Shown: in pieces, positions 25,086-54,350 of the stretch
Position numbering within the stretch: the stretch's first letter is position 1
Layout: every line of letters begins with the position of its first letter
Assembly: GCA_002269645.1 (NCBI GenBank)
Contig: NIVC01000245.1
Location: forward strand, 62,001-126,000
Reading direction: 5' to 3'
Origin: Macrostomum lignano
Taxonomy: Eukaryota
DNA: 64,000 nucleotides
Translations under genes and position numbers: made by a program
The notes under the pieces: model-generated
The model's input: the letters and a program-made list of their open reading frames with translations, nothing else
Told to the model about the DNA's origin: nothing
The model's database searches: none

Positions 25086-25913
25086 TAAGACACTTTGAGA
25101 CACTTTGAGACACACTGAGACACATTGAGACACATTGAGACACATTGAGATACATTGAGACACATTAAGACACACTGAGACACATTGAGACACATTGAGG
25201 CACATTAAGACACATTGAGACACATTGAGGCACATTAAGACACATTGAGACAATTTGAGACACACAGAGTCACTGTGAGACACTTTAAGACACTTTGAGA
25301 CATATTATGACACATTAGGACACATTGAGACACATTGAGACACATTGAGACACATTGAGACACTGTGAGACACATTGAGACACATTGAGACACATTAGGA
25401 CACATTGAGACAATTTGAGACACACTGAGTCACTGTGAGACACTTTAAGACACTTTGAGACACATTATGACACATTGAGACACATTAAGACATATTGAGA
25501 CACATTGAGACACATTAAGACACATTGAGACACATTGAGACACATTGAGACACATTGAGACACATTGAGACACTTTGAGACACACTGAGACACATTGAGA
25601 CACACTGAGACAATTTGAGACACACTGAGACACATTAAGACACACTGAGACACATTGAGACACACTGAGACAATTTGAGACACACTGAGACACTGTGAGA
25701 CACTTTGAGACACTTTGAGACACATTGAGACACACTGAGACACATTGAGGCACATTGAGACACATTGAGACACATTAAGACACATTGAGACACATTAAGA
25801 CACTTTGAGACACATTAAGACACTGTGAGATACATTGAGACACTGTGAGACACATTGAGATACGTTGAGACACATTGAGACACTTTGAGACACTTTGAGA
25901 CACATTGAGACAC
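25086..25913. repeat. 10-bp array (GAGACACATT)n
   Basis: Tandem copies with variants. Confidence 0.95.
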
Positions 25914-33500: not shown

Positions 33501-36500
33501 AACTTTTGTTATTATTATAAAATTTAGTATCATAAAGTGTAGTGATAAGTTAAAAATATATAAATTCTAACATTAACATAAATGTTGCTTGTAATCTCAA
33601 GTTCTATTTCTAAATGTTTTTGTTAACTTATTGTAATCAAATTATATAATTTATAGTCTGTCTATTTTGTTAGCATATTTTATAGTAGTATATTTTTCTC
33701 CATTATAAGCTGGTGAATGTCTGATAGATTATCTTCTATAAGTATTCTTGGCATTATTGAACAACCTACTATTTCAGAATTAGAAAAGAAATAGTTTTTT
33801 TAATCTTCTTTCCAATGCACCCCTATGCCTACATTGTAGATCTATCGCATAACAAGCTAACAGAATACCCAAAGCAGCTGTGCAACTGTCATTTCCTATC
33901 AATCAGCAATTGTAGTCACAATTTGTTAAAATCATTACCAGACGAATTTGATCAGCTGCAGAATCTTCTACAATTAGACTTGAGCTACAATTGTTTAACT
34001 GTACTGCCAAAATCATTGTGCAGATTGCAGAAATTGCAAGTGCTCATTATTTGTAATAATAAATTGTCCAGCTTGCCAGATGACTGTGGAGACCTTGTCA
34101 GTCTGGTAGTATTGGTGAGCTGTCAGTCAAATGAATATCCTAATATCTTAAACCCCAACCACATGCATTAAATATGAAATTCATATTGATTTTTTTTCCA
34201 GGATGCATCAAATAACAAAATTCAGAGCGCTTCAGCCAGGCTGGTCAATTTGAAAGCGTTGAGAATCTTCAAGCTTCGCAACAATGCATTGCAAAGTGTG
34301 CCAGAAGGTATGTTGTGCCTTTTGTAGGTTTTTTTTAGTTCTTCGGCTCTAAATGATTTCAAAGCTTGGAAAGCCAATTTGTGAAGATTCAAATTTGTGA
34401 AGATTCAAATATGTGAAAATTCGAACTTGTGAAGATTCGAAATTGTGAAGATTCGAACTTGTAAAAATTCGAACTTCTGAAGATTCGAAATTGTGAAGAT
34501 TCGAACTTGTGAAAATCTGAACTTGTGAAGATTTGAACTTGTGAAGATTCGAAATTGTGAAGATTCGAACTTGTGAAAATTCGAACTTGTGAAGATTCGA
34601 AATTGTGAAGATTCGAACTTGTGAAAATTCGAACTTCTGAAGATTCGAAATTGTGAAGATTCGAACTTGTGAAAATCTGAACTTGTGAAGATTTGAACTT
34701 GTGAAGATTCGAAATTGTGAAGATTCAAATTTGTGAAGATTCAAATTTGTGAAGATTCGAAATTGTGAAGATTCAAATTTGTGAAGATTCGAACTTGTGA
34801 AGATTCGAACTTGTGAAGATCTGAACTTGTGAAGATCTGAACTTGTGAAGGTCTGAACTTGTGAAGGTCTGAACTTGTGAAGATTCGAATTTATGAAGAT
34901 TCGAACTTGTGAAGATTGAAACTTGTGAAGATCCAAACTTGTAAAGATTTGAACTTTTGTGAATGTCCGAACTTGTGAAAATTCGAACTTGTGAAGATCT
35001 GAACTTGTGAAGGTCTGAACTTGTGAAGATTCGAACTTGTGAAGATTCGAATTTATGAAGATTCGAACTTGTAAAGATTCGAACTTTTGAAGATTCGAAT
35101 TTGTGAATATTCGAACTTGTGAAGATTCGAACTTGCGAAGATTTGAACTTGTGAAGATTCAAATTTGTGAAGATTTGAAATTGTGAAGATTCGAACTTGT
35201 GAAGATCTGAACTTGTGAAGGTTCGAATTTATGAAGATTCGAACTTGTGAAGATTCGAACTTGTGAAGATTCGAACTTTTGAAGATTCGAACTTGTGAAG
35301 ATTCGAACTTGTGAAGATTCGAACTTTTGAAGATTCGAACTTGTGAAGATTCGAACTTGTGAAGATTCGAACTTGCTAAGTAGCATATAAAGCGTGTTTA
35401 TTCATTCGCTAATACAAGTCAGAATCATCATATTCCCCTGAACCCCTATCAGAATGGTGCCATCTCCGGCTTCACTGCCTGGACTTGTCTGTCAATCAGC
35501 TGACAAGCTTGCCACCAGCCTACAGCGAGATGAGACCTGGCCTGACCCAGCTCAACCTTGAGCTCAATCCCATGCAGTCTCCGCCGCCTCACGTGTGCTG
35601 TCGCGGTCCCAGTCACGTGTTGAAATTTTTAGCCTCCTGCAGGGCCGGTACCGAACTGCCTTGGCACTATGCCAAACCGTCTTCCTCATCTGGGGCGGCA
35701 GTGTCCTCAGTTGGGCGGCGAAATCAAAATAATTTATCGGCGGCGACTTCAAAGGAACCGGCTGATGCAACGGTGGCTAATTCTACTGGAGTGCTGATTG
35801 CTGCGCCTGAAGATTTTGCCGATTTTAATGGAGACGCTTTGCCTGTGAGCACTTGTGTTTTTCTTTTTAAAGAATTGGGACTATTTGAAATTGCGTGCTA
35901 GCTCCATTGGGATTTCCCAGATTTTAGAGGATTTTTCGTCTTTAAGTTTTATTTAGTTTTTTTTATCCATGGGATCTTTTGGTTTTCTGGGATTTGAGTA
36001 TCTGTGGAATCTGGGTTATTGGAGATTTGAGAATCTGTGGGATCTGATTATCTGTGGGATTTGATTATCTGTGGGATCTGAGTATCTGTGGGATCTGAGG
36101 TATTGGGGATTTGAGTATCTGTGGGATCTGAGTATCTGTGGGATCTGAGGTATTGGGGATTTGAGTATCTGTGGGATCTGAGGTATTGGGGATTTGAGTG
36201 TCTGTGGGATCTGAGGTATTGGGGATTTGAGTGTCTGTGGGATCTGAGGTATTGGGGATTTGAGTGTCTGTGGGATCTGAGGTATTGAGGATTTGAGTAT
36301 CTGTGAGATCTGAGTTATTGGGGATTTGAGTGTCTGTGGGATCTGAGTTATTGAGGATTTGAGAATGTGAGGGATCTGAGTTATTGAGGATTTTAGTATC
36401 TGTGGGATCTAAGTTATTGAGGATTTGAGTATCTGTGAGATCTGAGTTATTGGGGATTTGAGTGTCTGTGGGATCTGAGTTATTGAGGATTTGAGAATGT

Positions 36501-39500
36501 GAGGGATCTGAGTTATTGAGGATTTGAGAATGTGAGGGATCTGAGTTATTGAGGATTTTAGTATCTGTGAGATCTGAGTTATTGGGGATTTGAGTGTCTG
36601 TGGGATCTGAGTTATTGGGGATTTGAGTGTCTGTGGGATCTTAGTCTCTGGGATCTGAGTTATTGGGGATTTGAGTGTCTGTGGGATCTGAGTTATTGGG
36701 GATTTGAGTGTCTGTGGGATCTTAGTCTCTGGGATCTGAGTTATTGGGGATTTGAGTGTCTGTGGGATCTTAGTCTCTGGGATCTGAGTTATTGGGGATT
36801 TGAGTTATTGGGGATTTGAGTTATTGGGGATTTGAGTTATTGGAGTGTATCTTTCACTGTGCAAGTTTTATTTTAATGTAAAAATCCTCTTTAGCAATTA
36901 ATTCCTTTCCATAATCACTGATTTTTTCGCTCTCTCAAACAAACAGTCCGCAAAAGAAGTAAAAAAATTGAAGTGGACTGCAAACGCATTCCACATTGGC
37001 ACTTGGTAAATTAATTATTTACGATTTACTGCCGTAAACATGGCAAATCACAAATATTTTTGTGTAAGATAAATAAAATGACTAGAAAATGAAGTTTCTA
37101 CCCATTTGGTTTGCCGGCATGCATTCGGATGAGTCAAATATTTTTTGTTTAAAATGTTAAACTCATATAGTTGCTTTTCACTAGTTTTTTAGCCCGCAAA
37201 GTTTTTTTCACATTTTAATTTTCGCATTTTTACTATCAGTAGAATGTTGGGGCGTTTTTTGCTTAATTTGTTGTACAAAAAAAACCATTCTATTTCTTCA
37301 GTCGATGCCTCAGCTGACGCAGCGGCGAATTTCTACTGTCTCGTCGGGTTCGTCTAGCGCCACTCAGCTCTCGGCTAGCGCTGCGGCTCTTCAATTCAGT
37401 TCGAGTAATTCGGTTATGCAACGTCTCGAACAGCAATCTAGCCGGCTTGGCGGTAGTTCCACGTTGCCAAGGCGACGGCCTGCAACGATTGTAACTCTCG
37501 ATGCAACCGCTGTTGACGCTTCAGTGAGCGGTGAGATTTTGCAATTTGAAATTGTTGGATTTGTTTTATGAGTATCTACGAGTTGATATTGTTGCTAGGG
37601 TAGCTACTGTGTTGCTAGGGTAACTATTGTGTTTCTACGTAGGGTAGCTATTGAGTTGCTAGGGTAGCTATTATGTCGCTAGGGTAGCTGCTACGTTGCT
37701 AGGGTAGCTGACTGAGTTGCTAGGGTGGCTACTGAGTTGCTAGGATAGCTATTGGGTTGCTAGGGTAGCTATTGGGTTGCTAGGGTAGCCATTGGGTTGC
37801 TAGGGTAGCTATTGGGTTGCTAGGGTAGCCATTGGGTTGCTAGGATAGCTATTGGGTTGCTAGGATAGCTACTGGGTTGCTAAGGTAGCTATTGGGTTGC
37901 TAGGGTAGCTATTGGGTTGCTAGGGTAACTATTGTGCTGCTAGGGTAGCTATTGCGTTGTTAGGATAGCTAATGCATTGCTAGGGTAGCTACTTTGTTGC
38001 TAGGGTAACTACTGTGTTGCTAGGGTAGCTATTGTGTTGCTATGGCAGCAAGATCGTATTGCTATGGTAACTACTCGGCTATCACGTTATGTTAAAAAAC
38101 CATCCTCAATTCCAGCCTCCGCCCCAGCAGCGCCATCGGCCCCGGCGCACCAGTCGGACAGTCCGGTCGCTGGCGACCAGCTCGGCCCGGCCGACGCCTC
38201 GGCCGTGGCAGCCATGCGCGCCATTGTGGAGCATCGGCTCGGAGTTCGATTGCCTGATCGGTCGGACAGGCTGGCCGAACGCTTGATTGACGGACAGCTA
38301 CTCGGACAGTTGGCCGAACTGGCCGGACAAGAAGGTGAAGCGTTGGTGTCGCCTGGTGGTCACGGCCGGCTGTTGGACTTGTACCAGCGGCTGGGAGTGT
38401 CCGAGGTGAGAATTGGAAGCGTACATTGCCATGAAACTTACCTGTTGCTATGGAGCCGGTTCTTTTGCTATGGGAACTACCCTGTAGCTCTGGAAACTAT
38501 CCTGTTGCTATGGGAACCATCCTGTTGCTATGGGAACCATCCTGTTGCTATGGGAACCATCCTGCTGCTGTGGGAACTATCCTGTTGCTATGGCAACTAT
38601 CCTGTTGCTATGGGAACTATCATGCTGCTAGGGGAAATATCCTGTAGCTATGGCCACCATCATGTTACTATGGGAATTATCCTGCTGCTATGGGAACTAT
38701 CTGTTGCTATGGGAACTATCATGCTGCTAGGGGAAATATCCTGTTGCTATGGCCACTATCCTGTTGCTATGGGAACCATCCTGTTGCTATTGAACTATCA
38801 TGCTGCTATGGGAAATATCCTGTTGCTATAACAACTATCTTGTTGCTATGGGAACTATCCTGTTGCTATGGTGACTATCCTGTTGCAATATACTACTCTG
38901 CTAAGAAAGCGATAAGTCTTACATTAGGTAGTTGAATTAAGTTTCGCGATTGCTTTCTTGAAAGAAATTTCGTAGTAACCGACATTTTTTTCTGGGCCCA
39001 GCGTTTTTTGCTTAGTTACATAACTTAACCTGCTAACTGTTAACTTTAATAAGTTAAATTAACCGTATTGTCTACTTGCAGTGCGGTGTTAAACCGTAGT
39101 TTGTGTTAATAATGCGATTCCTAACTTGTAAAAAAACACATTTTCAGGCTAACTTGTCCTTATTGGCAAAACTAGGGGACTGTCGTGTCAGAGGACCGCC
39201 ACAGTTTCTAGACAAAGTGCTGGCAATTGCTTTGCTCATCTTCTGGCTTCTAACCTGCGGTTACTTGCTAAATAACAGCTGGACTGTTTCTTGCTGATGT
39301 CGTGTTTTAAATATCTCGATATCATGAAACAGAACATTGGTCTTGATATTCATTTTGTTCATAAAACATAGCTCATTATTATTAGATTTTTTGGCGTACT
39401 CTATTGTGGTCGATGCTACATGTGCATCAAATGAGGTATGTGCATTCCGTCTCAGTACCGTCAGAGTCTCTGCCCCAATGCCCTCTCTCTCCCGACGAAA

Positions 39501-41015
39501 CCCCTACCCCAGTAGCATCTGCCCCCAATGTACTCTCTCTCCCGACGAAACCCCTACCACAGTAGCCCCTGCCCCCAATGTACTCTCTCTCCCGACGAAA
39601 CCCCTACCACAGTAGCCCCTGCCCCCAAATTACTCTCTCTCCCAAACAAACCCCTACCCCAGTAGCATCTGCCCCCAATGTACACTCCCGACGAAACCCC
39701 TACCCCAGTAGCCTCTGCCCCCAATGTACTCTCTCCTGACGAAACCCCTACCCCAATAGCATCTGCCCCCAATGTACTCTCTCCCAAACAAACCCCTACC
39801 CCAGTAGCCTCTGCCCCCAATGTACTCTCTCCTGACGAAACCCCTACCCCAGTAGCCTCTGCCCCCAATGTACTCTCTCCCAAACAAACCCCTACCCCAG
39901 TAGCCTCTGCCCCCAATGTACACTCTCCTAACTAAACCCCTACCCCAGTAGCCTCTGCCCCCAATGTTCTCTCTCCTAACTAAACCCCTACCCCAGTAGC
40001 CTCTGCCCCCAATGTACTCTCTCTCCTAACTAAACCTACCCCTGTAGCCTCTGCCCCTAATGTACACTCTCCTGACTAAACCCCTACCCCAGTAGCCTCT
40101 GCCCCCAATGTACTCTCTCTCCTAACTAAATCCCTACCTCAGTAGCCTCTGCCCCCAATGTACTCTCTCTCCTAACTAAACCCCTACCCCAGTAGCCTCT
40201 GCCCCCAATGAACACTCTCCTGATCTAACCCATACCAAATTAAGCCTCTGCCCTCAATGTACACCTAAAGGCCACTCTAGAACTTAAAATTGTAGAAAAA
40301 CATTGTAGCATTTATTCTCATGGCGTATTATATTCGTCCTATTTTTGTCTTGAAAATTTTCAACAGTTCATTTAAAACAATATTTCCAAGTTGCATATTC
40401 AATCAATGCACTGAATTCCTCTATCACTCACTTTCTAAGCTGTGGCCATAGGATATTCTTTAAGCTTTCAACTTATTTATCCACTACTAATATACAGTTT
40501 TTGTACGTTTTTATCTACGCTCAATGCGAGTTTTTAGAATTGTAACTTCTATTATTAAAACATTACCACGATAAACCGGTTTTTACAATAGTAATATTGA
40601 AAATCATTGCCTTGTTACATATGTTATAATTGAATCTCTGTCTGCTTTCACTTTGTCTCTTTGTCTTTTAATAATTTAATAATAAATTTACTTATTTTTA
40701 CCACATTGTCTAGTAACTTTAAATTTTCTTATTTTATTTTTTAAGTCTTGTTATATACGTTTCCTAGTTTTTTCGTTAAGAACTTTCTTCTCTTAACTTA
40801 ATACTATCTAGTTGCAGTTTTATAGTGAACTTTGATTCATCTCGATGGTCAGGAGAAAGTGCTTAATGCCCCTATATAGTTTCTGGATAGTTTCGATACG
40901 CTACTTATGTACATTCTGATCTATTTTTATTTTTATTGGTTTACAAATTTGTTTTATGTGTACATGCTCCCGGGATAACATAGAACACGTCACAGACAGA
41001 CAGACAGACAGGCAG

Positions 41016-41054
<39 letters not shown>

Positions 41055-41101
41055 TTAAGACACTAAGACAGAGAGACAGACAGACAGAGACAAACAGACA
41101 G

Positions 41102-41164
<63 letters not shown>

Positions 41165-41363
41165 GAGAGACAGACAGACAGACACTATGACAGACAGATA
41201 GACAGACAGACAGACACTATGACAGACAGATAGACAGAGAGATAGACAGACAGACAGACAGACAGACACTATGACAGACAAACAGACAGGCAGACAGACG
41301 GACAGACAGACATTAAGACACTAAGACAGAGAGACAGACAGACAGACGGACAGACAGACACGC

Positions 41364-41402
<39 letters not shown>

Positions 41403-41493
41403 TAAACACTATGGCAGACAGATAGACAGATAGACAGACACTATGACAGACACTATGACAGACAGATAGACAGACAGACAGACAGACAGACAC

Positions 41494-41544
<51 letters not shown>

Positions 41545-41653
41545 CTATGACAGACAGATAGACAGACAGACAGACACTATGACAGACAGATAGACAGAGA
41601 GATAGACAGACAGACAGACAGACAGACACTATGACAGACAAACAGACAGGCAG

Positions 41654-41684
<31 letters not shown>

Positions 41685-41811
41685 TTAAGACACTAAGACA
41701 GAGAGACAGACACGCAGACAGACAGACAGACAGACAGACAGATAGACAGACAGACAGACAGATAAACACTATGGCAGACAGATAGACAGATAGACAGACA
41801 CTATGACAGAC

Positions 41812-41860
<49 letters not shown>

Positions 41861-42385
41861 CACAGACAGACAGACAGACAGACAGACATTAAGACACTAA
41901 GACAGAGAGACAGACAGACAGAGACAAACAGACAGACAGACGGACACTCTGACATTTAATCAGACATAGACATAAACATGTTTGAAACGAAGATGCGCTG
42001 TGTTTTCTTGTTGTGGTGACTGAATCGTTAAAATCGTAACAAATATAATTGACCCTGACTAATTTGCTAACACTTTATAGACGTGAAATTGTCTAATTTC
42101 ACTACTGATTAATAAAACAAGTAGCATCTAACGCATTTTTTCTGTTAGTCTTTTTCATTGTACGATTTTGTTTGATCAGGAAGAATTGTAAAATTTTTTG
42201 GTGCGAATTTAAATTTTAACTTTCCCTTTTTCTAGTTGCCAGCGGCGAAGACTTCGGACCCCGTGATTCAGCACCTGGTGCGGATGTCGCGGGCTGTTAT
42301 CGCACTGGAAACCAGACTGAAACGCAATATTGGAGATTTAAAGTGCGCCGCTCCAACATTTAGAAGTAACGCGGATTTTGACTAA
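28378..42385 (+). CDS. LRCH: LRCH-like leucine-rich-repeat and calponin-homology protein, 7 exons (28378-28531, 33840-34114, 34202-34307, 35453-35844, 37302-37530, 38116-38405, 42236-42385), 1596 nt = 531 aa
   Basis: N-terminus [25 protein letters not shown] matches the LRCH start. It is followed by LRRs ([41 protein letters not shown]), the LRR cap [25 protein letters not shown] and a C-terminal CH-like segment [14 protein letters not shown]...[10 protein letters not shown]...YQRLGVSE. All six introns are GT-AG, the phases chain correctly, and the summed length is divisible by 3, ending in TAA. Confidence 0.88.
30030..31617. mobile_element. hAT/Charlie (MER58-like) MITE termini enclosing a long purine tract
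   Basis: Left end CAGGGATCGGCAGATTTTTATCTCAAAGGCCAGATA...GCGGGCCAGA and right end GGCCAGAGTTTGCCTGACATTCTG resemble CAGGGGTCGGCAAAC-type hAT MITE ends. No 8-bp TSD is seen. Confidence 0.5.
30090..31560. repeat. ~1.5-kb purine-rich (GA/GAA/GGA) low-complexity tract including a perfect (GA)n at ~30469-30541
   Basis: The plus strand is overwhelmingly A/G. Confidence 0.95.
32190..32568 (+). mobile_element. Possible old tRNA-derived SINE in LRCH intron 1
   Basis: A-box-like GTAGCCCAGTGG, degenerate B-box GGCTTGATTC, moderately GC-rich body in an AT-rich context, A-rich tail AATAAAAAAA. Confidence 0.35.
34378..35375. repeat. 16-bp minisatellite (GAAGATTCGAACTTGT)n in LRCH intron 3
   Basis: Tandem copies. 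Confidence 0.95.
36010..36845. repeat. ~33-bp dimeric (16+17) minisatellite (GGGATCTGAGTTATTG GGGATTTGAGTGTCTGT)n in LRCH intron 4
   Basis: Alternating related half-units. Confidence 0.9.
37590..38070. repeat. 20-bp minisatellite (GTTGCTAGGGTAGCTATTGG)n in LRCH intron 5
   Basis: Tandem copies. Confidence 0.9.
38430..38885. repeat. 20-bp minisatellite (GTTGCTATGGGAACTATCCT)n at the start of LRCH intron 6
   Basis: Tandem copies; related to the intron-5 unit. Confidence 0.9.
39465..40262. repeat. ~47-bp minisatellite (CCCAGTAGCCTCTGCCCCCAATGTACTCTCTCCTAACTAAACCCCTA)n
   Basis: Tandem copies in LRCH intron 6. Confidence 0.9.
40990..41950. repeat. (GACA)n microsatellite with interruptions
   Basis: Tandem 4-mers in LRCH intron 6. 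Confidence 0.95.
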
Positions 42386-42770
42386 TAAACAACATTTGAG
42401 ATTTTATAACTGTGTAGACCGTGTTAACTTGTCGAACTAGTTTGTAATTTTAAAATATCGTGATTCTAATTTTATGGAAAGTAGTCATAGTTAGTCGTAT
42501 TAAACTTGCTTGTGTTGTATGACTTCAAAAAATAAACGATATAGTAGTTGACAATTCATTTATTAAATGGTCATTTTTATTTGTCTAGCTAGTGCTTTTT
42601 TGCCCGAACGAAAAAACATATTGCACTACTTTTCAGACCAGGTATAAGTAGTACAAGTTGGCGGAATAAATACGAGCGTAAATCGTGTAGCTACAGAAAT
42701 AATGAAAGACGCACTAGTTAAACCAAACACAAAACTATCTGTACATAAAGCACAGAACTTATGTCCTTAG

Positions 42771-43706
42771 TTAGAAAATGTTAGCAAGGAACAGCAACCG
42801 CCTTCGGTCATACTCAGCCAGAATCAGATTAGCCTGATTACCCAACTCGATCAGGGCGACCCCAGAAGGCCTTTGAAGTGGGTTGCCTCCAGCATCCTGT
42901 AAGAAATTCTGCGAAACATTACCAGCAATGTCATAGACAGTGACAGAGTTGTTGGCGAACCCGCTAACGATCACGTGACCTTGGCTGTCTGCAGCAATCT
43001 GGCATAGCAGCGGTGAGCCGTCGATGGGTCCCGAGTGCTCTCTGAGATTCTGCAAGCCAATGCTTAACTTGAAGACGCGGCCGCTTCGATTGTCGCTCAT
43101 GAAGACGTCGTGCTCAGAAGCGGCAAGACTGCCGAGGTCCGACCCGACGAGCAGCGGCTCAGAGCTCAAGTTGACGATGCTCACTGCAGACAGCTGCTTG
43201 CTCAGCACCAGCAGTCGAGGTCCGCTCCGGTCCAGCAGCAAAATGCTGTCGTTGTTTCCAGCTACACCGCAGATGTTCAAAGAGTCGGCGCCTTCGTGCA
43301 GTCCGAGACGGTCGGCGCCGAGCTGCAGCGACACTCCGCCGCTGAGGTCCATCGCCGTGATTCGATCGGGCTGAGCCACGATCACCTGCTGCAGCTGCGA
43401 GTCCCAGTGCAGTCCCGTCACCTCCTTGTCCCAGTCGATGGAGTCGCAGTGAAGCTGGAACGGACCTGCCGAGCCATCCAGAGGCGACACAAGCAGGTAG
43501 TTAAAGATGCTCGGGTCGAATGACACCAGGACGCACGGCTGGGTCAGCGGCGATAAATATTGTTGAGTGCTGTCGGCGTCAGAGGCTCTGACCACTCGGC
43601 TGGACGAGTTGACAGCGAAGCCTCTTGTACAGGTGCACACAGCCAGCCGCTTGGGACTGGCCCTCAGAAAGTCGTGCTCAATTTTTGTGGACGATTGGTT
43701 AGGCAT
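42771..43706 (-). CDS. NHL-repeat / beta-propeller protein, copy A (311 aa, single exon, hydrophilic N-terminus)
   Basis: Intact ORF with NHL-like blades (QIAADSQGHVIVSGFANNSVTVYD; RPSGVAL...LILAEYDRRRLL). Paralogous to the adjacent plus-strand ORF. Confidence 0.75.
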   Translation of the reverse strand: MPNQSSTKIEHDFLRASPKRLAVCTCTRGFAVNSSSRVVRASDADSTQQYLSPLTQPCVLVSFDPSIFNYLLVSPLDGSAGPFQLHCDSIDWDKEVTGLHWDSQLQQVIVAQPDRITAMDLSGGVSLQLGADRLGLHEGADSLNICGVAGNNDSILLLDRSGPRLLVLSKQLSAVSIVNLSSEPLLVGSDLGSLAASEHDVFMSDNRSGRVFKLSIGLQNLREHSGPIDGSPLLCQIAADSQGHVIVSGFANNSVTVYDIAGNVSQNFLQDAGGNPLQRPSGVALIELGNQANLILAEYDRRRLLFLANIF

Positions 43707-43828
43707 ATTTTTAGTTATCTTTCGGTCACTTAATTTTGTTATAAACAGTAGTTCACTCGTTAAACGTAACCGTCTATTCGTGAGGTAAGGTTATTTAACG
43801 CAGATTCACAATTCAGATTCTTTTATTT

Positions 43829-44917
43829 ATGTTCTTTGAAAAGAAATTCCACGTGAAGCTGCATTTAGTGCGCCAGCCACTGTCAGAGCAGTTTTTGCTA
43901 GGGTTTTCTGCGGTGCTTGCTCTCTCTGTCTCTTTTGTAGCAGTTTATGCAAAGTGTAGACGGCTGGCTGTGTGCACCTGTACAAGAGGCTTCGCTGTCA
44001 ACTCGTCCAGCCGAGTGGTCAGAGCCTCTGACGCCGACAGCACTCAACAATATTTATCGCCGCTGACCCAGCCGTGCGTCCTGATGTCATTCGACCCGAG
44101 CATCTTCAACTACCTGCTTGTGTCGCCTCTGGATGGCGCGGCAGGTCCGTTCCAGCTTCACTGCGACTCCATCGACTGGGACAAGGAGGTGACGGGACTG
44201 CACTGGGACTCGCAGCTGCAGCAGGTGATCGTTGCTCAGCCCGATCGGATCACGGCGATGGACCTCAGCGGCGGAGTGTCGCTGCAGCTCGGCGCCGACC
44301 GTCTCGGACTGCGCGAGGGCGCCGACACTTTGGACATCTGCAGCGTAACTGGAAACAACGACAGCATTTTGCTGCTGGACCGGAGCGGACCTCGGCTGCT
44401 GGTGCTGAGCAAGCAGCTGTCTGCAGTGAGCATCGTCAACTTGAGCTTTGAGCCGCTGCTCATCGGGTCGGACCTCGGCAGTCTTGCCGCTTCTGAGCAC
44501 GACGTCTTCATGAGCGACAATCGAAGCGGCCGCGTCTTCAAGTTGAGTATTGGCTTGCAGAATCTCACAGAGCACTCGGGACCCATCAACGGCTCACCGC
44601 TGCTATGCCAGATTGCGGCAGACAGCCAAGGTCACGTGATCGTTAGCGGGTTCGCCAGCAACTCTGTCACTGTCTATGACATTGCTGGTAGTGTTTCGCA
44701 GAATTTGGTTGGCATTTTTTCTGCATGGCAACCTTTTAAGCTTCCGTCTGGCGTCGCGGTTTTCGAGTCCGACACTGGTATCACACTGCTCGTGTCCGAC
44801 TACGGTAGCAAAACTTTGTATGCGATTTCGTCTCCGTTTGATGAGTCTGACAAAGAAGTGGAGAAATTCTTGGGAATCTCCTTTTCCGAGGTGGTTAACT
44901 GTCGGTCCAGTGCCTAG
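43829..44917 (+). CDS. NHL-repeat / beta-propeller protein, copy B (362 aa, with an N-terminal hydrophobic segment)
   Basis: Intact ORF; 235 of 248 aa identical to copy A over RLAVCTC...VSQN; last blade KLPSGVAVFE...LLVSDYGSKTLY; N-terminal FLLGFSAVLALSVSFVAVYA followed by KCRR. The true start is uncertain because potential acceptors lie at 43940-43959. Confidence 0.7.
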   Translation: MFFEKKFHVKLHLVRQPLSEQFLLGFSAVLALSVSFVAVYAKCRRLAVCTCTRGFAVNSSSRVVRASDADSTQQYLSPLTQPCVLMSFDPSIFNYLLVSPLDGAAGPFQLHCDSIDWDKEVTGLHWDSQLQQVIVAQPDRITAMDLSGGVSLQLGADRLGLREGADTLDICSVTGNNDSILLLDRSGPRLLVLSKQLSAVSIVNLSFEPLLIGSDLGSLAASEHDVFMSDNRSGRVFKLSIGLQNLTEHSGPINGSPLLCQIAADSQGHVIVSGFASNSVTVYDIAGSVSQNLVGIFSAWQPFKLPSGVAVFESDTGITLLVSDYGSKTLYAISSPFDESDKEVEKFLGISFSEVVNCRSSA

Positions 44918-45044
44918 AAGACTGTTTCATGTGCTTTTCATGTGCTTTTCATAGCGTTTTCATGTGCTCTTGTTTCATTGTGTACTGTGGATTGTGCTTG
45001 TATAAACGCCATTTTTTACCAAGTAAAATTACTTGCATGTCATG

Positions 45045-45170
45045 CAGGGGCGTCGCCGTAGATTACTGTATATGGTGGGGGACAAATTAATAAAGCATTG
45101 GCATGTCCCCCATAGCTTTTACTGGGAGGAAACGTCCCTCCTGCCCCCCCCCCCTGGTGGTGACGCCCCT
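45045..45170. mobile_element. Short MITE with (G)CAGGGGCGTC...GACGCCCCTG(C) terminal inverted repeats
   Basis: TIRs at both ends of a ~125-bp GC-rich insert. A decayed, reverse-oriented relative of its interior lies at ~50275-50360. Confidence 0.6.
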
Positions 45171-46620
45171 GCTGCATGTACCAAGGTATACATGTAAATA
45201 CAAATCATGTACAGCAGGCACATTTTAATATTAAGCTATATAATTTATATATAACTTCTGTGAGCTGTGATACTCAAATTTTACATTTTTAGCGTAAAAT
45301 TTACGCCTGAATTTATGGTAATAGCTATATGTATTTTGCGTTAAAACTCACAAAAAATGTCCACATGTGGTACCCGCGTACAATTAATTTCTATAATTTA
45401 CATGTTACATGGCATGTCATGCGTAAAATGGACGTCACAATAGGCTTTTTACATGTACTGTTTTGCTCATAAAACAACAGCTGACTACTTCTTTTTTGTA
45501 ACTGTCGCACAATATAAAACAGAATATCGATTGTTTATATTCTTTGAAAAGTTTTATGTTACATTATGTAAATACAGCAGGATAACAATTAGCCGCACAA
45601 AATTGCGTCGAAATTGAAACAGAAATTGAAGCACGGCTTCAATGTTTCGTGTATAAGTTTTCGTCTTTTCGAGTATAAGTTTTAATAATTTTGGGGAATT
45701 GCTGATGAGTCATTATTTTACGCATCTTGTTTAACTTTTGAATCTACGTGTGTGTGTACTTGTAGTAGTAGTATAGTTGATTATCTTTTTCAGCAATTTT
45801 AGTTCTGAGGAACCCTTTGTGTATGTGATGCTAAATTATAAATTAAAGACGTTTTTATGTTCTTTTTTCAATTCAAGATGAGTGTGTGTAGTAAAAATGT
45901 AGTATTAACCAGTAATCTACAAGTCAAATGTTTTGAGTTTTTTTTCAGAAGACAAGTTACTGATGTTGAAAGAAAATTTAGATCGCATATTTTTATAGAA
46001 ACTGTCCAGCCAACCAGAAAAATGTTGAGGTAGCCACCTATAGCTACTAAACCGTTGCAAAAGTGATTTTATTGGTAAAAATCCTTCATACTCCACATAA
46101 ATTTCAGAAACGCATTTTCAGCCGAATTGTTCACTTTTATTTTCAAAGTAGGAGGCTGTCCAATCATTTATATGTGACAGTGTGATTCGTAGAAGCGTGT
46201 ATCGTATTTCTTTATTTTCATATGCATACCGTACTACTACTGTATTCTTTCATTTATTTTAACAATATTCGTACGTATTATTATCGCGCTATTTTTACTG
46301 TTAATTGCTTTGTTTTTGTAGCCTCGTATGTATTTATTCTATTATTTGTATTTCATTCATATCGTTATTATTTCTCGTAAAGTAGTTCTACTTATGTACA
46401 TGTACTGACGTATGTTATTCTTGCATGATATATTTATCGATTAATTTGTACATGTACATTGCGCGCCGCGTGGGGGGGGGGGTTGTTTGTCTGGGTTTTG
46501 GATTAAGGGTGTTGTTGTCTGTTTACCTTTAAATATATGCTTACACTAGTCAGCAGCCGCTCTCGCCCTTCCCCTTGCTTCGCTTCTCTAGACCTAGGCT
46601 TGCTAACCCTTAGCTGTGAC

Positions 46621-49329
46621 GCCCCGATCAAAAAAAGTTGGCTTAATTATGTCTTGAAGATGTCTTGCATAAGCTAGAAAGATGTCTTTAAGACGTCTTA
46701 TAATTGACTTAATTCGGTCTAAAAATTGGCTCCTTGCAACACTTGTAGACAGCTTAGAGATAACTTAAAGACGTCTTAAGACATCTTCAAGACATCTTAA
46801 AATCTGCTCAAAGACATCTTCCAGATGACTTGCAAAAGATGTCTTGCCCAAGATCATTTAAGAAATGCTGTTACCATGGTAATCAAAATTGTTTAAAAGA
46901 AATGACAAAAAGTATTACAGCACTCTTTTATTGGTTTCATTTCAGGCAACATTGATATTAAAGAAAAGCTTTTTGAGCTTCTAATTATGGTTCAATGCAA
47001 TTTATCATTTATTTTTTGATTTTATAAAAGGTACAGATTAAAAGTCACAAAAGCAATTAAAATGGTGAATTGAAAACAAGTAAAAATACAATATTTAATA
47101 AAAGTGCAAAAATACTCAATTGTATAAATATATAATGCATCATACCCAGTCATTGCATGGAAAGACTTAGTTAATGCAATAATGACTAAGTTGCTCATTG
47201 CTTGGTAAAAAGCTTGCTGTCAATTGATCCTTTGCTAGCCAATTACTAGTTTAGAATTGGCTTAATCCAGGAAGATTCAAGACCCAGGTTAGCTTGCACA
47301 ATGATAAATAGCATGCGTTGATAACAGTGGCTGAAAAAGATAAATTTAAAAAGGGTTATAGTTTATAGTTGAGTTTTAATAATTTCAAATTTATAAGTAA
47401 AAAGAATTAGATAATAAAAAATAAATAAAGAATAATTCTACTTTAAAACATTTATAAACAAATTATCTATAAGCTATACAAATTCAATAGCTTAGCCTTA
47501 GGCTCAAATATGTAGGCTAAGGCTTAGGGGCCTAGGGCCTAATCTCAAGGCAAAATAAAAAGATTGGAATGCCAATTTTATAAAACTTCTAACTTCTAAG
47601 TAAACTAACTCTATTTTTAAATCTATTAGGCCTAGGCCTAATCCAATTTTTGAATATGATATAATAAATTAGGCCTAGGCCTATATATAGCCATTTTAGG
47701 CTATCTATTTTTTATTTTAATTTTCATTGGCCTAGGGGGCCTAGCCTTTAGTTAGACAATGGCACCTATAATATATATATAGTATATTGAAAGCATATGT
47801 ACATTGCCATTAGCCACTAATAAAGGCAAAGAAAAAGGCAAAAGCAATAATATAGGGCTTAAGCCTAAGGCTTAGCCCAAGGAAATTATTTAATTTTGAC
47901 ATAAAAATCAAAACAAAATTTTTAGGCTTAAGGATAGAGCTAAGAGGCCTACAAAAAATTAGTCTTGATAAGCCAATCAATAGGCCTAGCTATAAAATTC
48001 TAACTTTAAATAAAAAACCAGAAGTAAGTAAATAAAACACTTTATACTTATAGGCCATAGTTAAAGCCTGAATCTTTTAAGGCCTAACTTATATTTTAGT
48101 TTAGTCTAATTTAAAATTATAATTTGGAAATCAGGATATTACAATTCTATTGCACAAAGATATAAAACTATATTCTGGGTTCTTTGTTTGCACCTGGCAT
48201 TAGGATGGGAAATCAAATCCTGGAAGCTATCCAAGGAAGGACTAAGTAAAAGACTAGGGGCCTTTTCATATTACCAATTCCAGAACCAGAATCGGTTCGG
48301 AATTCCAAGAAAAACAGCAGTATAACTATTAAACTCTGTTAATTTATTTGACTGCCTTAACAACCTAACTTAGCACAATTTTTCAATTTCTTCTTGGTGA
48401 TTGTCATTCAATAATAAAAACTTTATAGCACGTATCTCCCTCTAGTTATGGAGACAAAAAGTTATACTTCACAAATTGGTTCTGGTTCTGGAACCAGAGC
48501 AAGCAATATGAAAAGGCCCTAGGAAGGTCTAACTTGAGGATAGTAAATGTAAATCATCACTAATACACTATCACAGTAAGTAAGGATAAACCTAGGGTAG
48601 GGCTTAGGCCAGAAATCTATATAGGCTATAGCAGCCAATGAAAAATCGAAACTTATCACACAAGATAGAAACAAGTGTTCGACAATTAGGCCCCTAATCA
48701 TTAATTGATGATCATTAATCATGCCCGGGGGGTTGTCTTTAGTTCTTTTTAAAAATGATGTTCCGCCATTTTGTTTTTGGCTGTTTTGAACAAAAGCATC
48801 ACCGATAAGAATATATATTGCATCTTTGTCTATTTTTAATTCTGAGATGTTTAGATTTTTGTAAATATTTTTACCATCATCAATATTGTTGTAATTAAAC
48901 TTTGTCTTTAAGTTTATAACGACCCAATATAAAAAATTGCATATATTGCGCTTCAAAAAAGCTTAAAGGGTTATTTAAAATAAGCAAACCTTCCACAGAC
49001 TACAATTCAACGAAAATTAGCGATAAACGTCACAATAGTGCTTGATTTTCTTTTTTATCGATTTAGTGATCTGGATAAATTTGTATCTGAAATTTCCTAC
49101 TTACAGTAGAAACAGTAGTTTATGTAATTTTTTGTCTTTAAGGTGATGTCTTAAAGATGTCTTAAACAAGACATCTCACAAAAGTCAATTTTAAGTCATC
49201 TTGAAGACAGCTTCGTCAGGATGGCTTGTAGAAGCAAAGTTAAAGATATCTTGAAATTGTCTTGAGGTGTCTTTAGCCATCTTAAGACAATTATAAGATG
49301 TCTTAAGACAACTTCTTTTTGATCGGGGC
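46621..49329. mobile_element. Non-autonomous DNA transposon with GCCCCGATCAAAAAA TIRs and subterminal AAGATGTCTT/AAGACATCTT repeats (CMC/EnSpm-like organisation)
   Basis: Left GCCCCGATCAAAAAAAGTTG and right CAACTTCTTTTTTGATCGGGGC. Both ~200-bp subterminal zones are packed with AAGA(C/T)(A/G)TCTT motifs. The AT-rich interior has no intact transposase; TSD not identified. Confidence 0.7.
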
Positions 49330-52199: not shown

Positions 52200-53139
52200 A
52201 TGAAGAGACACAAGGCACTAACTGGATTATTTAAACATCTCATGCAGCAGAAGCAGCGTCCATACTGGTTTCACGGCCAGTTGGGTCGCGAAGAAACTGA
52301 GCGTCGTTTACACGCTCAAGGCGGCCATGGCGACTATCTAGTTAGATATTCCAGCGCCACTGGCAAATATGTTCTGTCATTGCTGCACACTGACGGCTCG
52401 ATCTATCACTATCCAATTGATCGATTGGACGATGGTTTCTATCAATTAAGAGGAACTGAATCGAAATTTCTCGGCTTGGATTTGTTGCTAACTGATTTTA
52501 GTAGGGCTCTAGTTGAAGCATCGGGCGGCATTGTCAGACGGTTGGGTAGGCACGTACAAGCGCAGGAGCCTCCGCCCGCGGAGCTGATAGTCTATGGCAC
52601 AACCACCCCCCTGCACGAGGCTGTACGTCGCGGCGATACATTAGAAATTCGTCGCTTATTGTTAAGCTTGTTACAGTTGGCTAAGACTACTACTAGTACT
52701 AGTGGTCAGTTGTCAATATCTATTGTGAATGAGAAATCAGCAGATACCGGTTCTACAGCTTTGATTGATGCAGCTAAGACTGGCAATGCCGATTCTGTTA
52801 GACTGCTGTTGGAGGCTGGGGCAAATACGGCACTGTGGGACTGCGCTGGTTATTCTGCGTTGCATCGAGCTGCTCAGAAAGATTTTGTCAGCGTTGTGGA
52901 GCTGCTGCTCACGCTGGGGAAAGCTGATCCACAGGTTAGCTTTAGGTGGACAAAATCTGACACTTGAAAATGCTGTGGGAGAGTCAGGGTGCGAGTCAGG
53001 AGGTAGAAGAGTCAGGGGATGGCAGGATCAGGTAATGAGAGAGTCAGCTAAGAGAATCAGGGATAAGAGAGAGTCAGATGAGAGAACCAGAAATGAGAAT
53101 CGGAGAGAGAGCGATGAGAGAATCAACCACGAGACTCAA

Positions 53140-53174
<35 letters not shown>

Positions 53175-54307: not shown

Positions 54308-54350
<43 letters not shown>

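What the first reader, a model, noticed from the sequence alone, without database searches (positions are those of the whole stretch)
42771..44917. Head-to-head NHL-propeller gene pair forming a palindrome with a gene-conversion signature and swapped termini
Seen: two divergently oriented ORFs with candidate starts 122 bp apart (43706 and 43829). Their 744-bp cores (~42906-43649 and 43961-44704, 311-bp spacer) are inverted near-copies, 235/248 aa identical. Similarity stops abruptly on both sides. The last blades are still homologous (both PSGVA...LL/IL..(D/E)Y) but otherwise very divergent, and the N-termini are unrelated: copy A is hydrophilic (MPNQSSTKIEHDFLR), copy B has a hydrophobic stretch followed by KCRR (signal-anchor-like). 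Five of the 13 core differences fall in one 13-aa window (HEGADSLNICGVA vs REGADTLDICSVT). Inference: an old inverted duplication whose middle is homogenised by arm-to-arm gene conversion, giving a cytosolic and a membrane/secreted version of one propeller from a shared bidirectional promoter. Read-through could also form long hairpin dsRNA.
Basis: partly seen in the sequence, partly recalled or inferred. Interest (0 to 1): 0.7.

Follow-up and report, generated by a model that had tools for sequence, protein, structure and literature searches.

The report
Inverted NHL-propeller gene pair, flatworm
Two head-to-head copies of an NHL-propeller gene in a Macrostomum lignano-like flatworm genome are kept alike by copying between the two arms; the pair is a cut-down version of a three-gene cluster, a solid but ordinary case of gene-family evolution.

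Summary
Arms 42904-43649 and 43961-44706 are 746 nt long with 22 mismatches and no gaps, and the spacer is 311 nt. The two ORFs differ at 13 of 248 core residues.

The DNA is Macrostomum lignano-like (a neopolyploid flatworm). The proteins are single-exon, propeller-only members of a lineage-specific NHL family.

Two other versions of the locus (L001, L002) each hold three genes: alpha and beta in tandem, and gamma inverted. There alpha and gamma form a 987-nt inverted repeat around a 5-kb spacer that contains beta.

The window lacks 4.2 kb and 979 bp of that layout:
- Copy A is beta's 5' end joined to alpha's body.
- Copy B is gamma without its own start codon. It is fused in frame to formerly intergenic DNA, which supplies the "signal anchor".

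Arm-to-arm gene conversion is well supported:
- Synonymous divergence is 0.05 in the core and about 1.75 in the last blade.
- Variants shared by both arms of one locus outnumber variants that group by gene.
- A 54-nt indel is shared by both arms of L001 and absent from both arms of L002.

The cytosolic/membrane split, the bidirectional promoter and the hairpin RNA are untested. The first is unlikely. An assembly chimera at the alpha/beta junction cannot be excluded.

The parts
42771..43706 (-). Copy A, 311 aa, a single-exon NHL propeller. It is a hybrid: the first 38 nt (43669-43706) and the upstream DNA are beta-type, and nt 39-936 (42771-43668) are alpha-type.
   Evidence: ORF. CDS nt 39-936 are 99.9% identical to the alpha copy of L002, while nt 1-38 match the start of beta (P0002). 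Open frame confirmed.
42904..43649 (-). Left arm of the inverted repeat (core of A, blades 1 to 5 and part of blade 6).
   Evidence: It has 1 mismatch in 746 nt to alpha of L002 and 22 to the right arm.
43663..43668 (.). Junction 1. The 6 nt (TCTGAG in coding sense) match both alpha and beta. To the left the window is about 100% identical to L002; to the right it is about 93% identical to both L001 and L002. About 4.2 kb of the three-gene layout is missing here (L002rc 6736-10967: alpha's 5' end, the delta fragment and the body of beta).
43650..43960 (.). 311-nt spacer. It consists of beta-type 5' coding nucleotides, 122 nt of non-ORF DNA (43707-43828, GC 0.30) and the 132 nt that code for B's N-terminal extension.
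   Evidence: It aligns to the DNA upstream of beta in L001 and L002 at 92.9%. Composition.
43829..43960 (+). N-terminal extension of B (44 codons, with a hydrophobic stretch), derived from DNA that lies between beta and gamma in L001 and L002.
   Evidence: In L002 the same DNA is a separate 42-codon ORF ending in TAG; in L001 it is frameshifted. GC3 is 0.48 here against 0.74 in the core.
43951..43953 (+). Run of three A. Two of them are an insertion relative to L001 and L002. The insertion shifts the frame past the TAG and into the frame of the propeller.
   Evidence: Alignment.
43961..43963 (.). Junction 2, with 3 nt of microhomology (CGG). Missing here are 979 bp of the three-gene layout (L002rc 11260-12238), which include gamma's own ATG (MQFI...) and the inner 241 nt of the ancestral arm.
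43961..44706 (+). Right arm of the inverted repeat (core of B).
   Evidence: It differs at 28-29 of 746 nt from gamma of L002 and L001 and carries 9 private substitutions.
43829..44917 (+). Copy B, 362-aa open frame: the gamma-type propeller without its native start codon, fused to the extension.
42771..42903 (-). Alpha-type last blade and stop codon of A. This part has not been converted.
   Evidence: It differs at 0-2 of 125 nt from alpha of L002 and L001, but at 62 of 115 from gamma.
44707..44917 (+). Gamma-type last blade and C-terminal tail of B. This part has not been converted.
   Evidence: It differs at 3 of 118 nt from gamma of L001 and L002. dS against A's tail is about 1.75.
44313..44348 (+). 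Cluster of 7 A/B differences in 36 nt (HEGADSLNICGVA in A, REGADTLDICSVT in B). It covers the loop between blades 2 and 3 and the first strand of blade 3.
   Evidence: The matching stretch in A is 43262-43297. The model has pLDDT below 50 at residues 138-140.

Best explanation
The window carries one of the three subgenome versions of a small cluster of single-exon NHL-propeller genes in Macrostomum lignano or a very close relative.

The fuller layout is seen in two other contigs. It has alpha and beta in tandem on one strand, a beta 3' fragment (delta) between them, and gamma on the other strand, head to head with beta. Alpha and gamma are old paralogs, and their last blades are saturated with changes. 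From about 240 nt upstream of the propeller to the middle of blade 6 they form a 987-nt inverted repeat. Recurrent arm-to-arm gene conversion keeps that repeat 97-98% identical. Beta takes part in the conversion over the first 450 nt only.

The window version has two gaps relative to this layout:
- A recombination within the homology shared by the direct repeats alpha and beta removed 4.2 kb. It left a Lepore-type hybrid gene, A, made of beta's promoter and first 13 codons joined to alpha's body.
- A 979-bp microhomology deletion removed gamma's own upstream region and start codon. It fused gamma's propeller to intergenic DNA. That DNA, with a 2-nt insertion, happens to read in frame and gives copy B.

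What is shown: the repeat, the comparative layout, both junctions and the concerted-evolution pattern.

What is inferred: that the three-gene layout is ancestral, the mechanisms of the two deletions, and that the arrangement is a real chromosome rather than an assembly product.

A is probably a working cytosolic propeller expressed from beta's promoter. B is more likely a decaying or at best newly rewired copy than a designed membrane form.
For: Organism and family:
- The only close proteins are M. lignano Mlig020103g1 and Mlig025699g1/g2.
- Distant relatives are about 530-aa single-exon M. lignano proteins, found in clusters, whose propeller begins exactly at 'LAVC'.
- The fold is an NHL propeller.

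Layout:
- L001 and L002 each hold alpha, delta, beta and gamma. The alpha/gamma inverted repeat is 987 nt at 97.8% with a 5040-nt spacer.
- Both flanks of the window are collinear with these loci.

Conversion:
- dS is 0.051 in the core and 1.75 in the last blade. Beta against alpha/gamma gives 0.06 in part 1 and 0.9 in part 2.
- Quartet sites in the core are 5 by locus, 1 by gene and 1 other, both for L001 vs L002 and for window vs L001. Beyond the core they are 0 by locus and 61 by gene.
- The 54-nt indel in the N-terminal region is shared by both arms of L001 and absent from both arms of L002.
- A and B share the variants at CDS 648-659 (LGLQNL) against gamma of L001 and L002.
- GC3 is highest (0.75-0.77) in the segment shared by all three genes and about 0.5 in other family genes. 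This is only weakly suggestive of GC-biased conversion.

Three versions are expected. About 85% of the DV1 genome is present in three copies, with 2.2% SNPs and abundant indels (PMC10733133).
Against: - No reads were available, so neither junction is independently confirmed.
- The window is a mosaic: 39400-40200 is 99.5-100% identical to L001, 41200-43650 is about 100% identical to L002, and 43600-44000 is about 93% identical to both. The switch of ancestry falls exactly at junction 1. An unequal crossover between two versions would give that pattern, but so would a false join inside the repeat.
- The exact proteins A and B are not on record in any public gene call.
- The two breakpoints are nearly mirror-symmetric, 19 nt apart within the arms. 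Two independent deletions do not explain this.
- There are no transcript data for either copy in this arrangement.
Confidence: 0.6

Rival explanations
1. Assembly chimera. The true third version of the locus also has three genes. The assembler, or haplotype switching in the consensus, joined alpha-type reads of the L002-like version to beta-type reads of another version inside their shared 450-nt repeat. This collapsed 4.2 kb and created the tight palindrome.
For: - Junction 1 lies inside sequence shared by alpha and beta.
- It coincides with a jump from about 100% to about 93% identity to L002.
- The window also contains a block identical to L001.
- The published analysis warns of collapsed and expanded paralogs in this genome (PMC10733133).
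Against: - Junction 2 has only 3 nt of microhomology, so an overlap-based false join cannot have made it. At least one of the two deletions is therefore very likely real.
- The spacer and gamma are a distinct third sequence type, not a mix of L001 and L002.
- Both reading frames stay open.
- Kilobase indels between the three subgenomes are the norm.
- An unequal crossover between two versions predicts the same switch of ancestry.
Confidence: 0.3
2. The pair is a deliberately diversified two-gene unit. A cytosolic copy and a signal-anchored or secreted copy of one propeller are driven by one bidirectional promoter, and the unrelated N-termini are maintained by selection.
For: - Both frames are open.
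- The ATGs are 122 bp apart.
- B has a strongly hydrophobic 19-residue segment.
- The in-frame fusion needed both a deletion and a 2-nt insertion, which could hint at selection for an open frame.
Against: - The extension is not conserved as part of the gene. In L002 it ends in a stop, and in L001 it is frameshifted.
- Its composition is not like the coding core: GC3 is 0.48 against 0.74.
- It abuts the first beta-strand of the propeller with no linker. Strand 18-24 of the model is PKRLAVC.
- In L001 and L002, gamma has its own start codon (MQFI...) and upstream arm.
- B carries 9 private substitutions, 6 of them nonsynonymous. This is the longest branch and is compatible with relaxed constraint.
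- Known NHL domains of this type are intracellular RNA- or protein-binding modules (established knowledge about TRIM-NHL proteins).
Confidence: 0.08
3. A single event with no ongoing exchange. One partial inverted duplication, or one long conversion, overwrote the core of an old paralog before the three versions of the locus separated. Everything since is ordinary divergence.
For: - The 3' boundary of the identical tract is the same in all three loci: window 42904/44706, L002rc 5971/12984, L001 10782.
- Arm-to-arm divergence (2.3-3.9%) is of the same size as the divergence between versions.
- Window vs L002 gives 1 site by locus against 6 by gene.
Against: - Variants shared within a locus outnumber variants that group by gene 5 to 1 in two of the three comparisons.
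- The 54-nt indel is shared by both arms within L001 only.
- Alpha and gamma of L002 differ at 7 of 450 nt in part 1, while alpha L001/L002 differ at 14 and gamma L001/L002 at 13.
- The 1-to-6 result is expected, because the window's alpha is virtually the L002 allele.
Confidence: 0.07

Closest known systems
Palindromes with arm-to-arm gene conversion (human and ape Y-chromosome ampliconic palindromes, X-chromosome palindromes; Rozen et al. 2003, cited from my own knowledge)
   Same: Inverted arms carry genes and stay 97-98% identical, while sequence just outside the arms is far more diverged. Arms of one copy share variants that the corresponding arms of another copy lack.
   Different: This one is tiny: 0.75-1 kb arms against 9 kb to 1.45 Mb. 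The arms end inside the coding sequence, so the two genes keep different last blades. A third, tandem paralog joins in over part of the tract. Identity is lower (97%, against more than 99.9%). The comparison is between subgenomes of a neopolyploid, not between species.
Lepore-type hybrid genes made by unequal crossover between tandem paralogs (delta/beta-globin Lepore, red/green opsin hybrids, CYP21A1P/CYP21A2 chimeras; from my own knowledge)
   Same: Copy A has the 5' end and upstream DNA of one tandem paralog (beta) and the body of the next one (alpha). The DNA between them is deleted, and the breakpoint lies in shared sequence.
   Different: The event is inferred from comparison with two other versions of the locus only. 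It is not confirmed in reads and could be an assembly join. The crossover interval is not resolved, because the beta gene of this version is lost.
TRIM-NHL proteins (TRIM2, TRIM3, TRIM32/Thin, TRIM71/LIN-41, Brat, Mei-P26)
   Same: Both have a six-bladed NHL propeller. The model matches at TM 0.62-0.74, and the family profile hits the Thin, TRIM71 and TRIM2/3 NHL domains at E-values from 2e-35 to 3e-21.
   Different: A and B are the propeller alone, with no RING, B-box, coiled coil or filamin domain. Even the about 530-aa Macrostomum relatives have an N-terminal Cys-rich plus helical region that matches no Pfam family. Sequence identity to solved NHL domains is only 14-18%. No RNA-binding or ligase role has been tested.
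New N-terminal coding sequence gained from non-coding DNA or by capture of a small ORF
   Same: B's first 44 codons come from DNA that is intergenic in the other two versions. There it forms a separate short ORF in one version and is frameshifted in the other. A deletion plus a 2-nt indel joined it in frame.
   Different: There is no evidence that the extension is transcribed or translated. It may only be an open frame in a gene that has lost its start codon.

Membership tests
NHL-repeat beta-propeller | Six-bladed propeller fold that superposes on solved NHL domains | tested here: met
   The AF2 model of A built on a 19-sequence alignment has pLDDT 88.2 and pTM 0.88, with 24 strands in six sheets. 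Top Foldseek hits are the NHL domains of TRIM2, TRIM3, Thin and TRIM71, at E about 1e-11 and TM 0.62-0.74.
NHL-repeat beta-propeller | Pfam NHL repeat (PF01436) above the gathering score | tested here: inconclusive
   A scores 15.6 bits and B 13.6 bits against a cutoff of 20. Five of 19 family members match at E of 0.01 or better, and P0007 passes with 26.6 bits. The family profile hits the Thin NHL domain at 2.4e-35 and TRIM71 at 1.4e-29.
TRIM-NHL (tripartite motif) proteins | RING, B-box and coiled coil N-terminal to the NHL domain | tested here: not met
   A and B begin 13-45 residues before the first propeller strand. No N-terminal module is coded anywhere in the window, L001 or L002. The long relatives have a Cys-rich plus helical N-terminus with no Pfam match.
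Inverted repeat under arm-to-arm gene conversion (concerted evolution) | Synonymous divergence drops sharply inside the arms compared with the adjacent homologous coding sequence | tested here: met
   dS is 0.051 in the core and about 1.75 in the last blade. Identity profile.
Inverted repeat under arm-to-arm gene conversion (concerted evolution) | Arms of one locus share derived variants that the corresponding arms of another version of the locus lack | tested here: met
   Quartet sites are 5 by locus, 1 by gene and 1 other for L001 vs L002, and the same for window vs L001. Outside the arms they are 0 by locus and 61 by gene. The 54-nt indel is shared by both arms of L001 only.
Inverted repeat under arm-to-arm gene conversion (concerted evolution) | GC enrichment of the converted tract (GC-biased conversion) | tested here: inconclusive
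   GC3 is 0.75-0.77 in the segment shared by three genes, 0.68-0.69 in the segment shared by two, 0.55-0.56 in the tails and 0.47-0.50 in other family genes. Beta's unconverted part is also 0.65.
Inverted repeat under arm-to-arm gene conversion (concerted evolution) | Conversion tracts detected in population or pedigree data | not testable with these tools
   No population data or reads were available.
Hybrid gene made by unequal crossover between tandem paralogs | 5' part from one paralog, 3' part from the next paralog in the same orientation, with the interval deleted and the breakpoint in shared sequence | tested here: met
   A nt 1-38 and the upstream DNA are beta-type. Nt 39-936 and the downstream flank are alpha-type, 99.9% identical to L002. 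L002rc 6736-10967 is absent. The 6 nt TCTGAG are shared at the junction.
Hybrid gene made by unequal crossover between tandem paralogs | Junction present in the organism's DNA (reads or PCR) | not testable with these tools
   No reads were available. The exact proteins are not on record.
Signal-anchor (type II/III) membrane protein, for copy B | N-terminal hydrophobic segment of about 19 or more residues | tested here: met
   FLLGFSAVLALSVSFVAVY has mean Kyte-Doolittle 2.19. No dedicated signal-peptide or transmembrane predictor was available.
Signal-anchor (type II/III) membrane protein, for copy B | The segment is conserved as part of the coding sequence in relatives | tested here: not met
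   In L002 the segment ends in a stop, and in L001 it is frameshifted. Gamma there starts at its own ATG, 979 bp further on.
Bidirectional promoter pair | Divergent genes with starts less than 1 kb apart | tested here: met
   122 bp lie between the ATGs.
Bidirectional promoter pair | Mapped divergent transcription start sites | not testable with these tools
   No transcript data were available. The promoter scan on offer covers bacterial sigma-70 only, so it was not used.
Hairpin-RNA (endogenous siRNA) locus | One transcript spanning both arms, and small RNAs mapping to them | not testable with these tools
   In silico only: an RNA of 42904-44706 would fold at -1713 kcal/mol with 734 arm-to-arm pairs, against about -660 for shuffles. 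The two genes diverge, so normal transcription does not produce such an RNA.

The most novel reading that the evidence does not exclude
The tight palindrome is a real, recently formed allele. In it a deletion plus a 2-nt insertion captured a small hydrophobic intergenic ORF as a new N-terminus. This turned an intracellular NHL propeller into a membrane-tethered or secreted protein expressed from the neighbouring gene's promoter. It would be a caught-in-the-act case of new coding sequence and new localisation, in one of three subgenomes of a neopolyploid. A related reading is that bringing the arms to 311 nt apart created a hairpin-RNA source that silences the family.
Probability: 0.08. Interest if true: 0.55.

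Novelty: new member of a known kind. Interest (0 to 1): 0.3.

Why it matters
The pair is a clean, small example of concerted evolution. The conversion tract ends inside a coding sequence, so two genes share blades 1-5 but keep different last blades.

M. lignano carries three diverged versions of most loci in one inbred line. This lets conversion, unequal crossover and deletion since the genome duplication be read from a single genome, and this locus shows all three.

It also gives a practical warning. The apparent domain swaps and the signal anchor in this window come from rearrangement, or possibly from assembly, and not from designed diversification. For flatworm biology it adds propeller-only members to a lineage-specific NHL family of unknown function.

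None of this changes a general principle.

Tried and rejected
- Exact look-ups of proteins A and B and of the 805-aa zinc-finger ORF found nothing on record. The source assembly of the window therefore could not be identified, and no independent contig with the same junctions was found.
- I tried to reach the third syntenic contig of Mlig_3_7 (NIVC01000245.1; loci L003 and L005) through flanking genes. The family genes I could look up on that contig lie about 300 kb from where the locus should be.
- A search for an upstream exon coding the Cys-rich/coiled-coil N-terminus of the long relatives found nothing in the window, L001 or L002. The idea that the ORFs are last exons of longer genes was rejected, also because the long relatives are themselves single-exon.
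- A full-text search for the gene names Mlig025699 and Mlig020103 found no paper.
- The first structure model, from 4 near-identical sequences, was poor (pLDDT 65). It was replaced by the model from 19 sequences.
- The GC3 values for the tails were computed out of frame and should be ignored. One search gives the codon-aligned values.
- I considered a fold-back or missing-adapter read artefact as the source of the palindrome and rejected it. The arms differ at 22 sites, have different tails, and have flanks collinear with other contigs on both sides.
- I considered the window layout as ancestral and rejected it as less parsimonious. Beta's own body and 3' end, and the 5' arm shared by alpha and gamma, exist in both other versions.
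Full report
**Observation**

The repeat finder reports arms 42904-43649 and 43961-44706, 746 nt and 97% complementary, with 311 nt between them. BLAST gives 97.05% identity with no gaps, that is, 22 differences. The two ORFs are 42771-43706 on the minus strand (311 aa, copy A) and 43829-44917 on the plus strand (362 aa, copy B). Their ATGs are 122 bp apart. Nine of the 22 core differences are synonymous and 13 are not. Identity collapses within about 60 nt at each end.

**Organism and protein family**

The window is eukaryotic. Roughly a third of it is micro- and minisatellite arrays.

The only close proteins in the large database are three Macrostomum lignano gene models: Mlig020103g1 (P0001, 92% identical to B), Mlig025699g1 (P0002) and Mlig025699g2 (P0003).

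An exhaustive HMMER search found 85 relatives. The nearest, at 26-35% identity, are mostly about 500-535-aa M. lignano proteins. In these, a Cys-rich plus helical N-terminal part of about 220 aa precedes a propeller that starts exactly at the motif 'LAVC..GF' where the arms begin. These genes have one exon and lie in local clusters.

Pfam's NHL model is below threshold on A and B but passes on one relative. A profile of the family hits the solved NHL domains of Thin, TRIM71, TRIM2, TRIM3 and Brat, with E-values from 2e-35 to 1e-13. An AlphaFold model built on 19 sequences is confident (pLDDT 88, pTM 0.88) and superposes on those NHL domains at TM 0.62-0.74.

So 'NHL propeller' is right. A and B are propeller-only proteins, and no N-terminal module is coded nearby.

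**The fuller layout of the locus**

Fetching the contigs that carry P0001 and P0002 (L001 = NIVC01000909.1, L002 = NIVC01000268.1, both from assembly GCA_002269645.1) changed the picture. Both hold three full copies and one fragment. In window orientation (L002rc is the reverse complement of L002) the order is:

1. alpha, minus strand
2. a beta 3' fragment, delta
3. beta, minus strand (this is P0002)
4. about 1.2 kb
5. gamma, plus strand (this is the P0001 type)

Alpha and gamma form an inverted repeat of 987 nt at 97.8%, with a 5040-nt spacer that contains beta. The repeat covers the 746-nt core, a further 19 nt, and about 220 nt that include a shared start codon (MQFI...AHLRASPKR) and upstream DNA. 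Beta has its own 5' end (MPNQSSAKIEHDFLR). It is 96-99% identical to alpha and gamma over the first 450 nt of the core, and 33% different after that.

The flanks are syntenic with the window: an LRR gene on one side and an SH2-ankyrin-tyrosine-kinase gene on the other.

**What the window is, relative to that layout**

Going rightward, the window follows alpha and its downstream flank up to 43668. It then jumps to the first 38 nt of beta and the DNA upstream of beta (43669-43960). Then it jumps to the core of gamma at 43961. Two stretches of the fuller layout are missing:

- L002rc 6736-10967 (4.2 kb): alpha's 5' arm, delta and the body of beta.
- L002rc 11260-12238 (979 bp): gamma's upstream region, its start codon and the inner 241 nt of its arm.

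Junction 1 lies in sequence shared by alpha and beta; six nucleotides, TCTGAG, match both. The sites used to tell alpha from beta are themselves variable between versions, and the beta gene of this version is gone. The real crossover could therefore lie anywhere in roughly the first 140 nt or more of the shared tract.

Junction 2 has 3 nt of microhomology, CGG.

So the 'unrelated N-termini' have simple origins. A carries beta's promoter-proximal DNA and first 13 codons on alpha's body, which makes it a Lepore-type hybrid. B is gamma's propeller fused to DNA that is intergenic in the other versions. In L002 that DNA forms a separate 42-codon ORF ending in TAG just before the junction point. In L001 the ORF is frameshifted. 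In the window, a 2-nt insertion in the A run at 43951-43953 bypasses the TAG and brings the segment into the propeller's frame.

The extension has GC3 of 0.48, against 0.74 in the core. It runs straight into the first beta-strand of the model, PKRLAVC at residues 18-24 of A.

**Gene conversion**

dS between A and B is 0.051 across the core and about 1.75 in the last blade. dS between beta and alpha/gamma is about 0.06 in the first 450 nt and about 0.9 after that.

The comparison between versions separates ongoing exchange from one old event. In the last blade every informative site groups by gene (61 of 61), and copies of the same gene differ by 0-2.5%. Inside the core, informative sites group by locus: 5 against 1, with 1 other, both for L001 vs L002 and for window vs L001. 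Alpha and gamma of L002 differ at 7 of 450 sites in the first part, while the two alphas differ at 14 and the two gammas at 13.

The clearest single marker is a 54-nt indel in the N-terminal coding region. Both arms of L001 lack the 54 nt and both arms of L002 have them. In the window, A and B share the LGLQNL variants (CDS 648-659) against gamma of L001 and L002.

Window vs L002 gives 1 against 6. This is expected, because the window's alpha is essentially the L002 allele, with 1 difference in 898 nt.

GC3 is highest in the tract shared by three genes and lowest in unrelated family genes. That fits GC-biased conversion, but beta's unconverted half is also GC-rich, so I count this as weak evidence.

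The 3' boundary of the tract is the same in all three versions. It was therefore set before they separated, and later exchanges stayed inside it.

**Selection and the variable window**

dN/dS is 0.3-0.45 across the comparisons, which indicates moderate constraint. All copies keep open frames, although alpha of L001 has an in-frame loss of 72 codons that must break the propeller.

B has the longest branch, with nine private substitutions, six of them nonsynonymous. That is compatible with relaxed constraint, but the numbers are too small to say more.

Seven of the 22 A/B differences fall in 36 nt (scan P about 0.004). Two of them are shared with beta or with other arms, four are private to B (one synonymous), and one is A's own variant. 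The stretch maps to the loop between blades 2 and 3, which has low model confidence at residues 138-140, and to the first strand of blade 3. By analogy with other propellers this loop lies on the top face, but I did not verify that on coordinates. The stretch could be a short conversion tract from an unsampled donor, a multi-nucleotide mutation, or selection on a binding loop. I could not tell these apart.

**Real chromosome or assembly product?**

A published analysis shows that the inbred DV1 line carries three diverged versions of about 85% of its genome, with 2.2% SNPs, 1.1% in coding sequence, and very abundant indels. It also warns about collapsed and expanded paralogs in assemblies (PMC10733133). 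A third version of this locus with kilobase indels is therefore expected.

The window is a mosaic:

| Window region | Identity to the other versions |
|---|---|
| 39400-40200 | 99.5-100% to L001 |
| 41200-43650 | about 100% to L002 |
| 43600-44000 | about 93% to both |
| Gamma (43961-44706) | about 96% to both |

The change of ancestry falls exactly at junction 1. An unequal crossover between alpha of one version and beta of another would produce this. So would a false join inside the repeat.

Junction 2 cannot be an overlap artefact. The spacer and gamma are a distinct third sequence type. I put the arrangement at about 60-65% real and about 30% chimeric at junction 1. The near mirror-symmetry of the two breakpoints, 19 nt apart within the arms, is unexplained. 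A single replication-based rearrangement with two template switches would account for it, but I have no evidence for one.

**Function**

What A and B do is unknown. The fold is that of intracellular RNA- or protein-binding NHL domains. The most economical reading is that A is a working propeller expressed from beta's promoter. B has lost its own start codon and upstream DNA and is on its way to becoming a pseudogene, or at best has been newly rewired.

The shared-promoter idea rests only on the 122-bp distance between ATGs. The hairpin idea rests only on an in-silico fold of a transcript that normal divergent transcription would not make. M. lignano uses spliced-leader trans-splicing (PMC8629364), so transcript starts cannot be guessed from the DNA.

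**Verdict**

The functional ideas are untested, and the membrane idea is unlikely. This is a new member of a known kind: a small palindromic gene pair under concerted evolution, plus a hybrid gene from unequal crossover. It is of moderate-to-low general interest. It is useful mainly as a worked example in a three-subgenome animal and as a caution about reading domain swaps from one assembly.

Noticed in passing
window 44313-44348 (B) and 43262-43297 (A): Seven of the 22 arm differences lie in 36 nt (scan P about 0.004). Four are private to B, one of them synonymous. This looks more like a short conversion tract from an unsampled donor, or a multi-nucleotide event, than independent point changes.
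   Followed up: partly
window 43663-43668 and 43961-43963: The two rearrangement breakpoints sit at nearly mirror-image positions in the two arms, 19 nt apart. Two independent deletions do not explain this; one replication-based event might.
   Followed up: no
window 39400-46600: The window has mosaic ancestry relative to the two other versions of the locus. One block is identical to L001 (39400-40200), one is identical to L002 (41200-43650), and some blocks are 3-7% diverged from both. The cause is either exchange between subgenomes or haplotype switching in the assembly.
   Followed up: partly
window 46623-49327: A 2.7-kb AT-rich insertion is absent from L001. It has clusters of AAGACGTCTT-type subterminal inverted repeats at both ends (46652-46825 and 49182-49314) and looks like a non-autonomous DNA transposon.
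   Followed up: partly
window, many sites (for example 6838-8381, 10933-11662, 16743-17624, 20695-23963, 25088-25914, 34379-35375, 40992-41946, 54891-56197, 58093-59116, 61859-63403): There are at least 20 long tandem arrays with units of 8-48 nt, up to 3.3 kb long (a 12-nt unit repeated 272 times). They generate most of the long 'ORFs' in the window. Array lengths differ between the three versions of the locus.
   Followed up: no
window 4404-6821 (-): A single 805-aa ORF codes a C2H2 zinc-finger protein with proline- and glutamine-rich low-complexity regions. The exact protein is not on record in public gene calls.
   Followed up: partly
window 52200-56933 (+): A multi-exon gene codes SH2, ankyrin repeats, a second SH2 and a tyrosine kinase domain (the Shark/Syk-like architecture). 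Tandem arrays sit in its introns. It is syntenic with the 792-aa gene next to gamma in L001.
   Followed up: partly
window 60600-61132 (+): An exon codes a deoxynucleoside kinase domain (Pfam dNK, 9e-25). It lies directly downstream of a 28-nt tandem array that is read through in the same open frame.
   Followed up: no
L001 4119-4968 (-): The alpha copy of L001 has an in-frame 216-nt deletion that removes 72 codons (blades 4-5). It otherwise keeps an open frame and still takes part in the inverted repeat.
   Followed up: partly
L002 11988-12236 (+) and L001 6594-6837 (-): A fragment of beta's last 80 codons (delta, 84-88% identical) lies between alpha and beta in both three-gene loci. In L002 it is annotated as a 77-aa gene (P0004).
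   Followed up: partly
window 45092-45171; L001 5666-5745 and 11453-11528: A short repeat with a poly-C/poly-G centre (GGGAGGAAACGTCCCTCCTGCCCCCCC) occurs downstream of gamma and, inverted, upstream of alpha in the three-gene loci. It is probably a dispersed element and may mark old duplication boundaries.
   Followed up: no
L003 10031-14151, L004 10031-14171, L005 6595-16062: Full-length (about 530-aa) members of the same NHL family lie in local clusters, in convergent pairs and in a tandem trio. Other clusters of this family may therefore show similar exchange.
   Followed up: no
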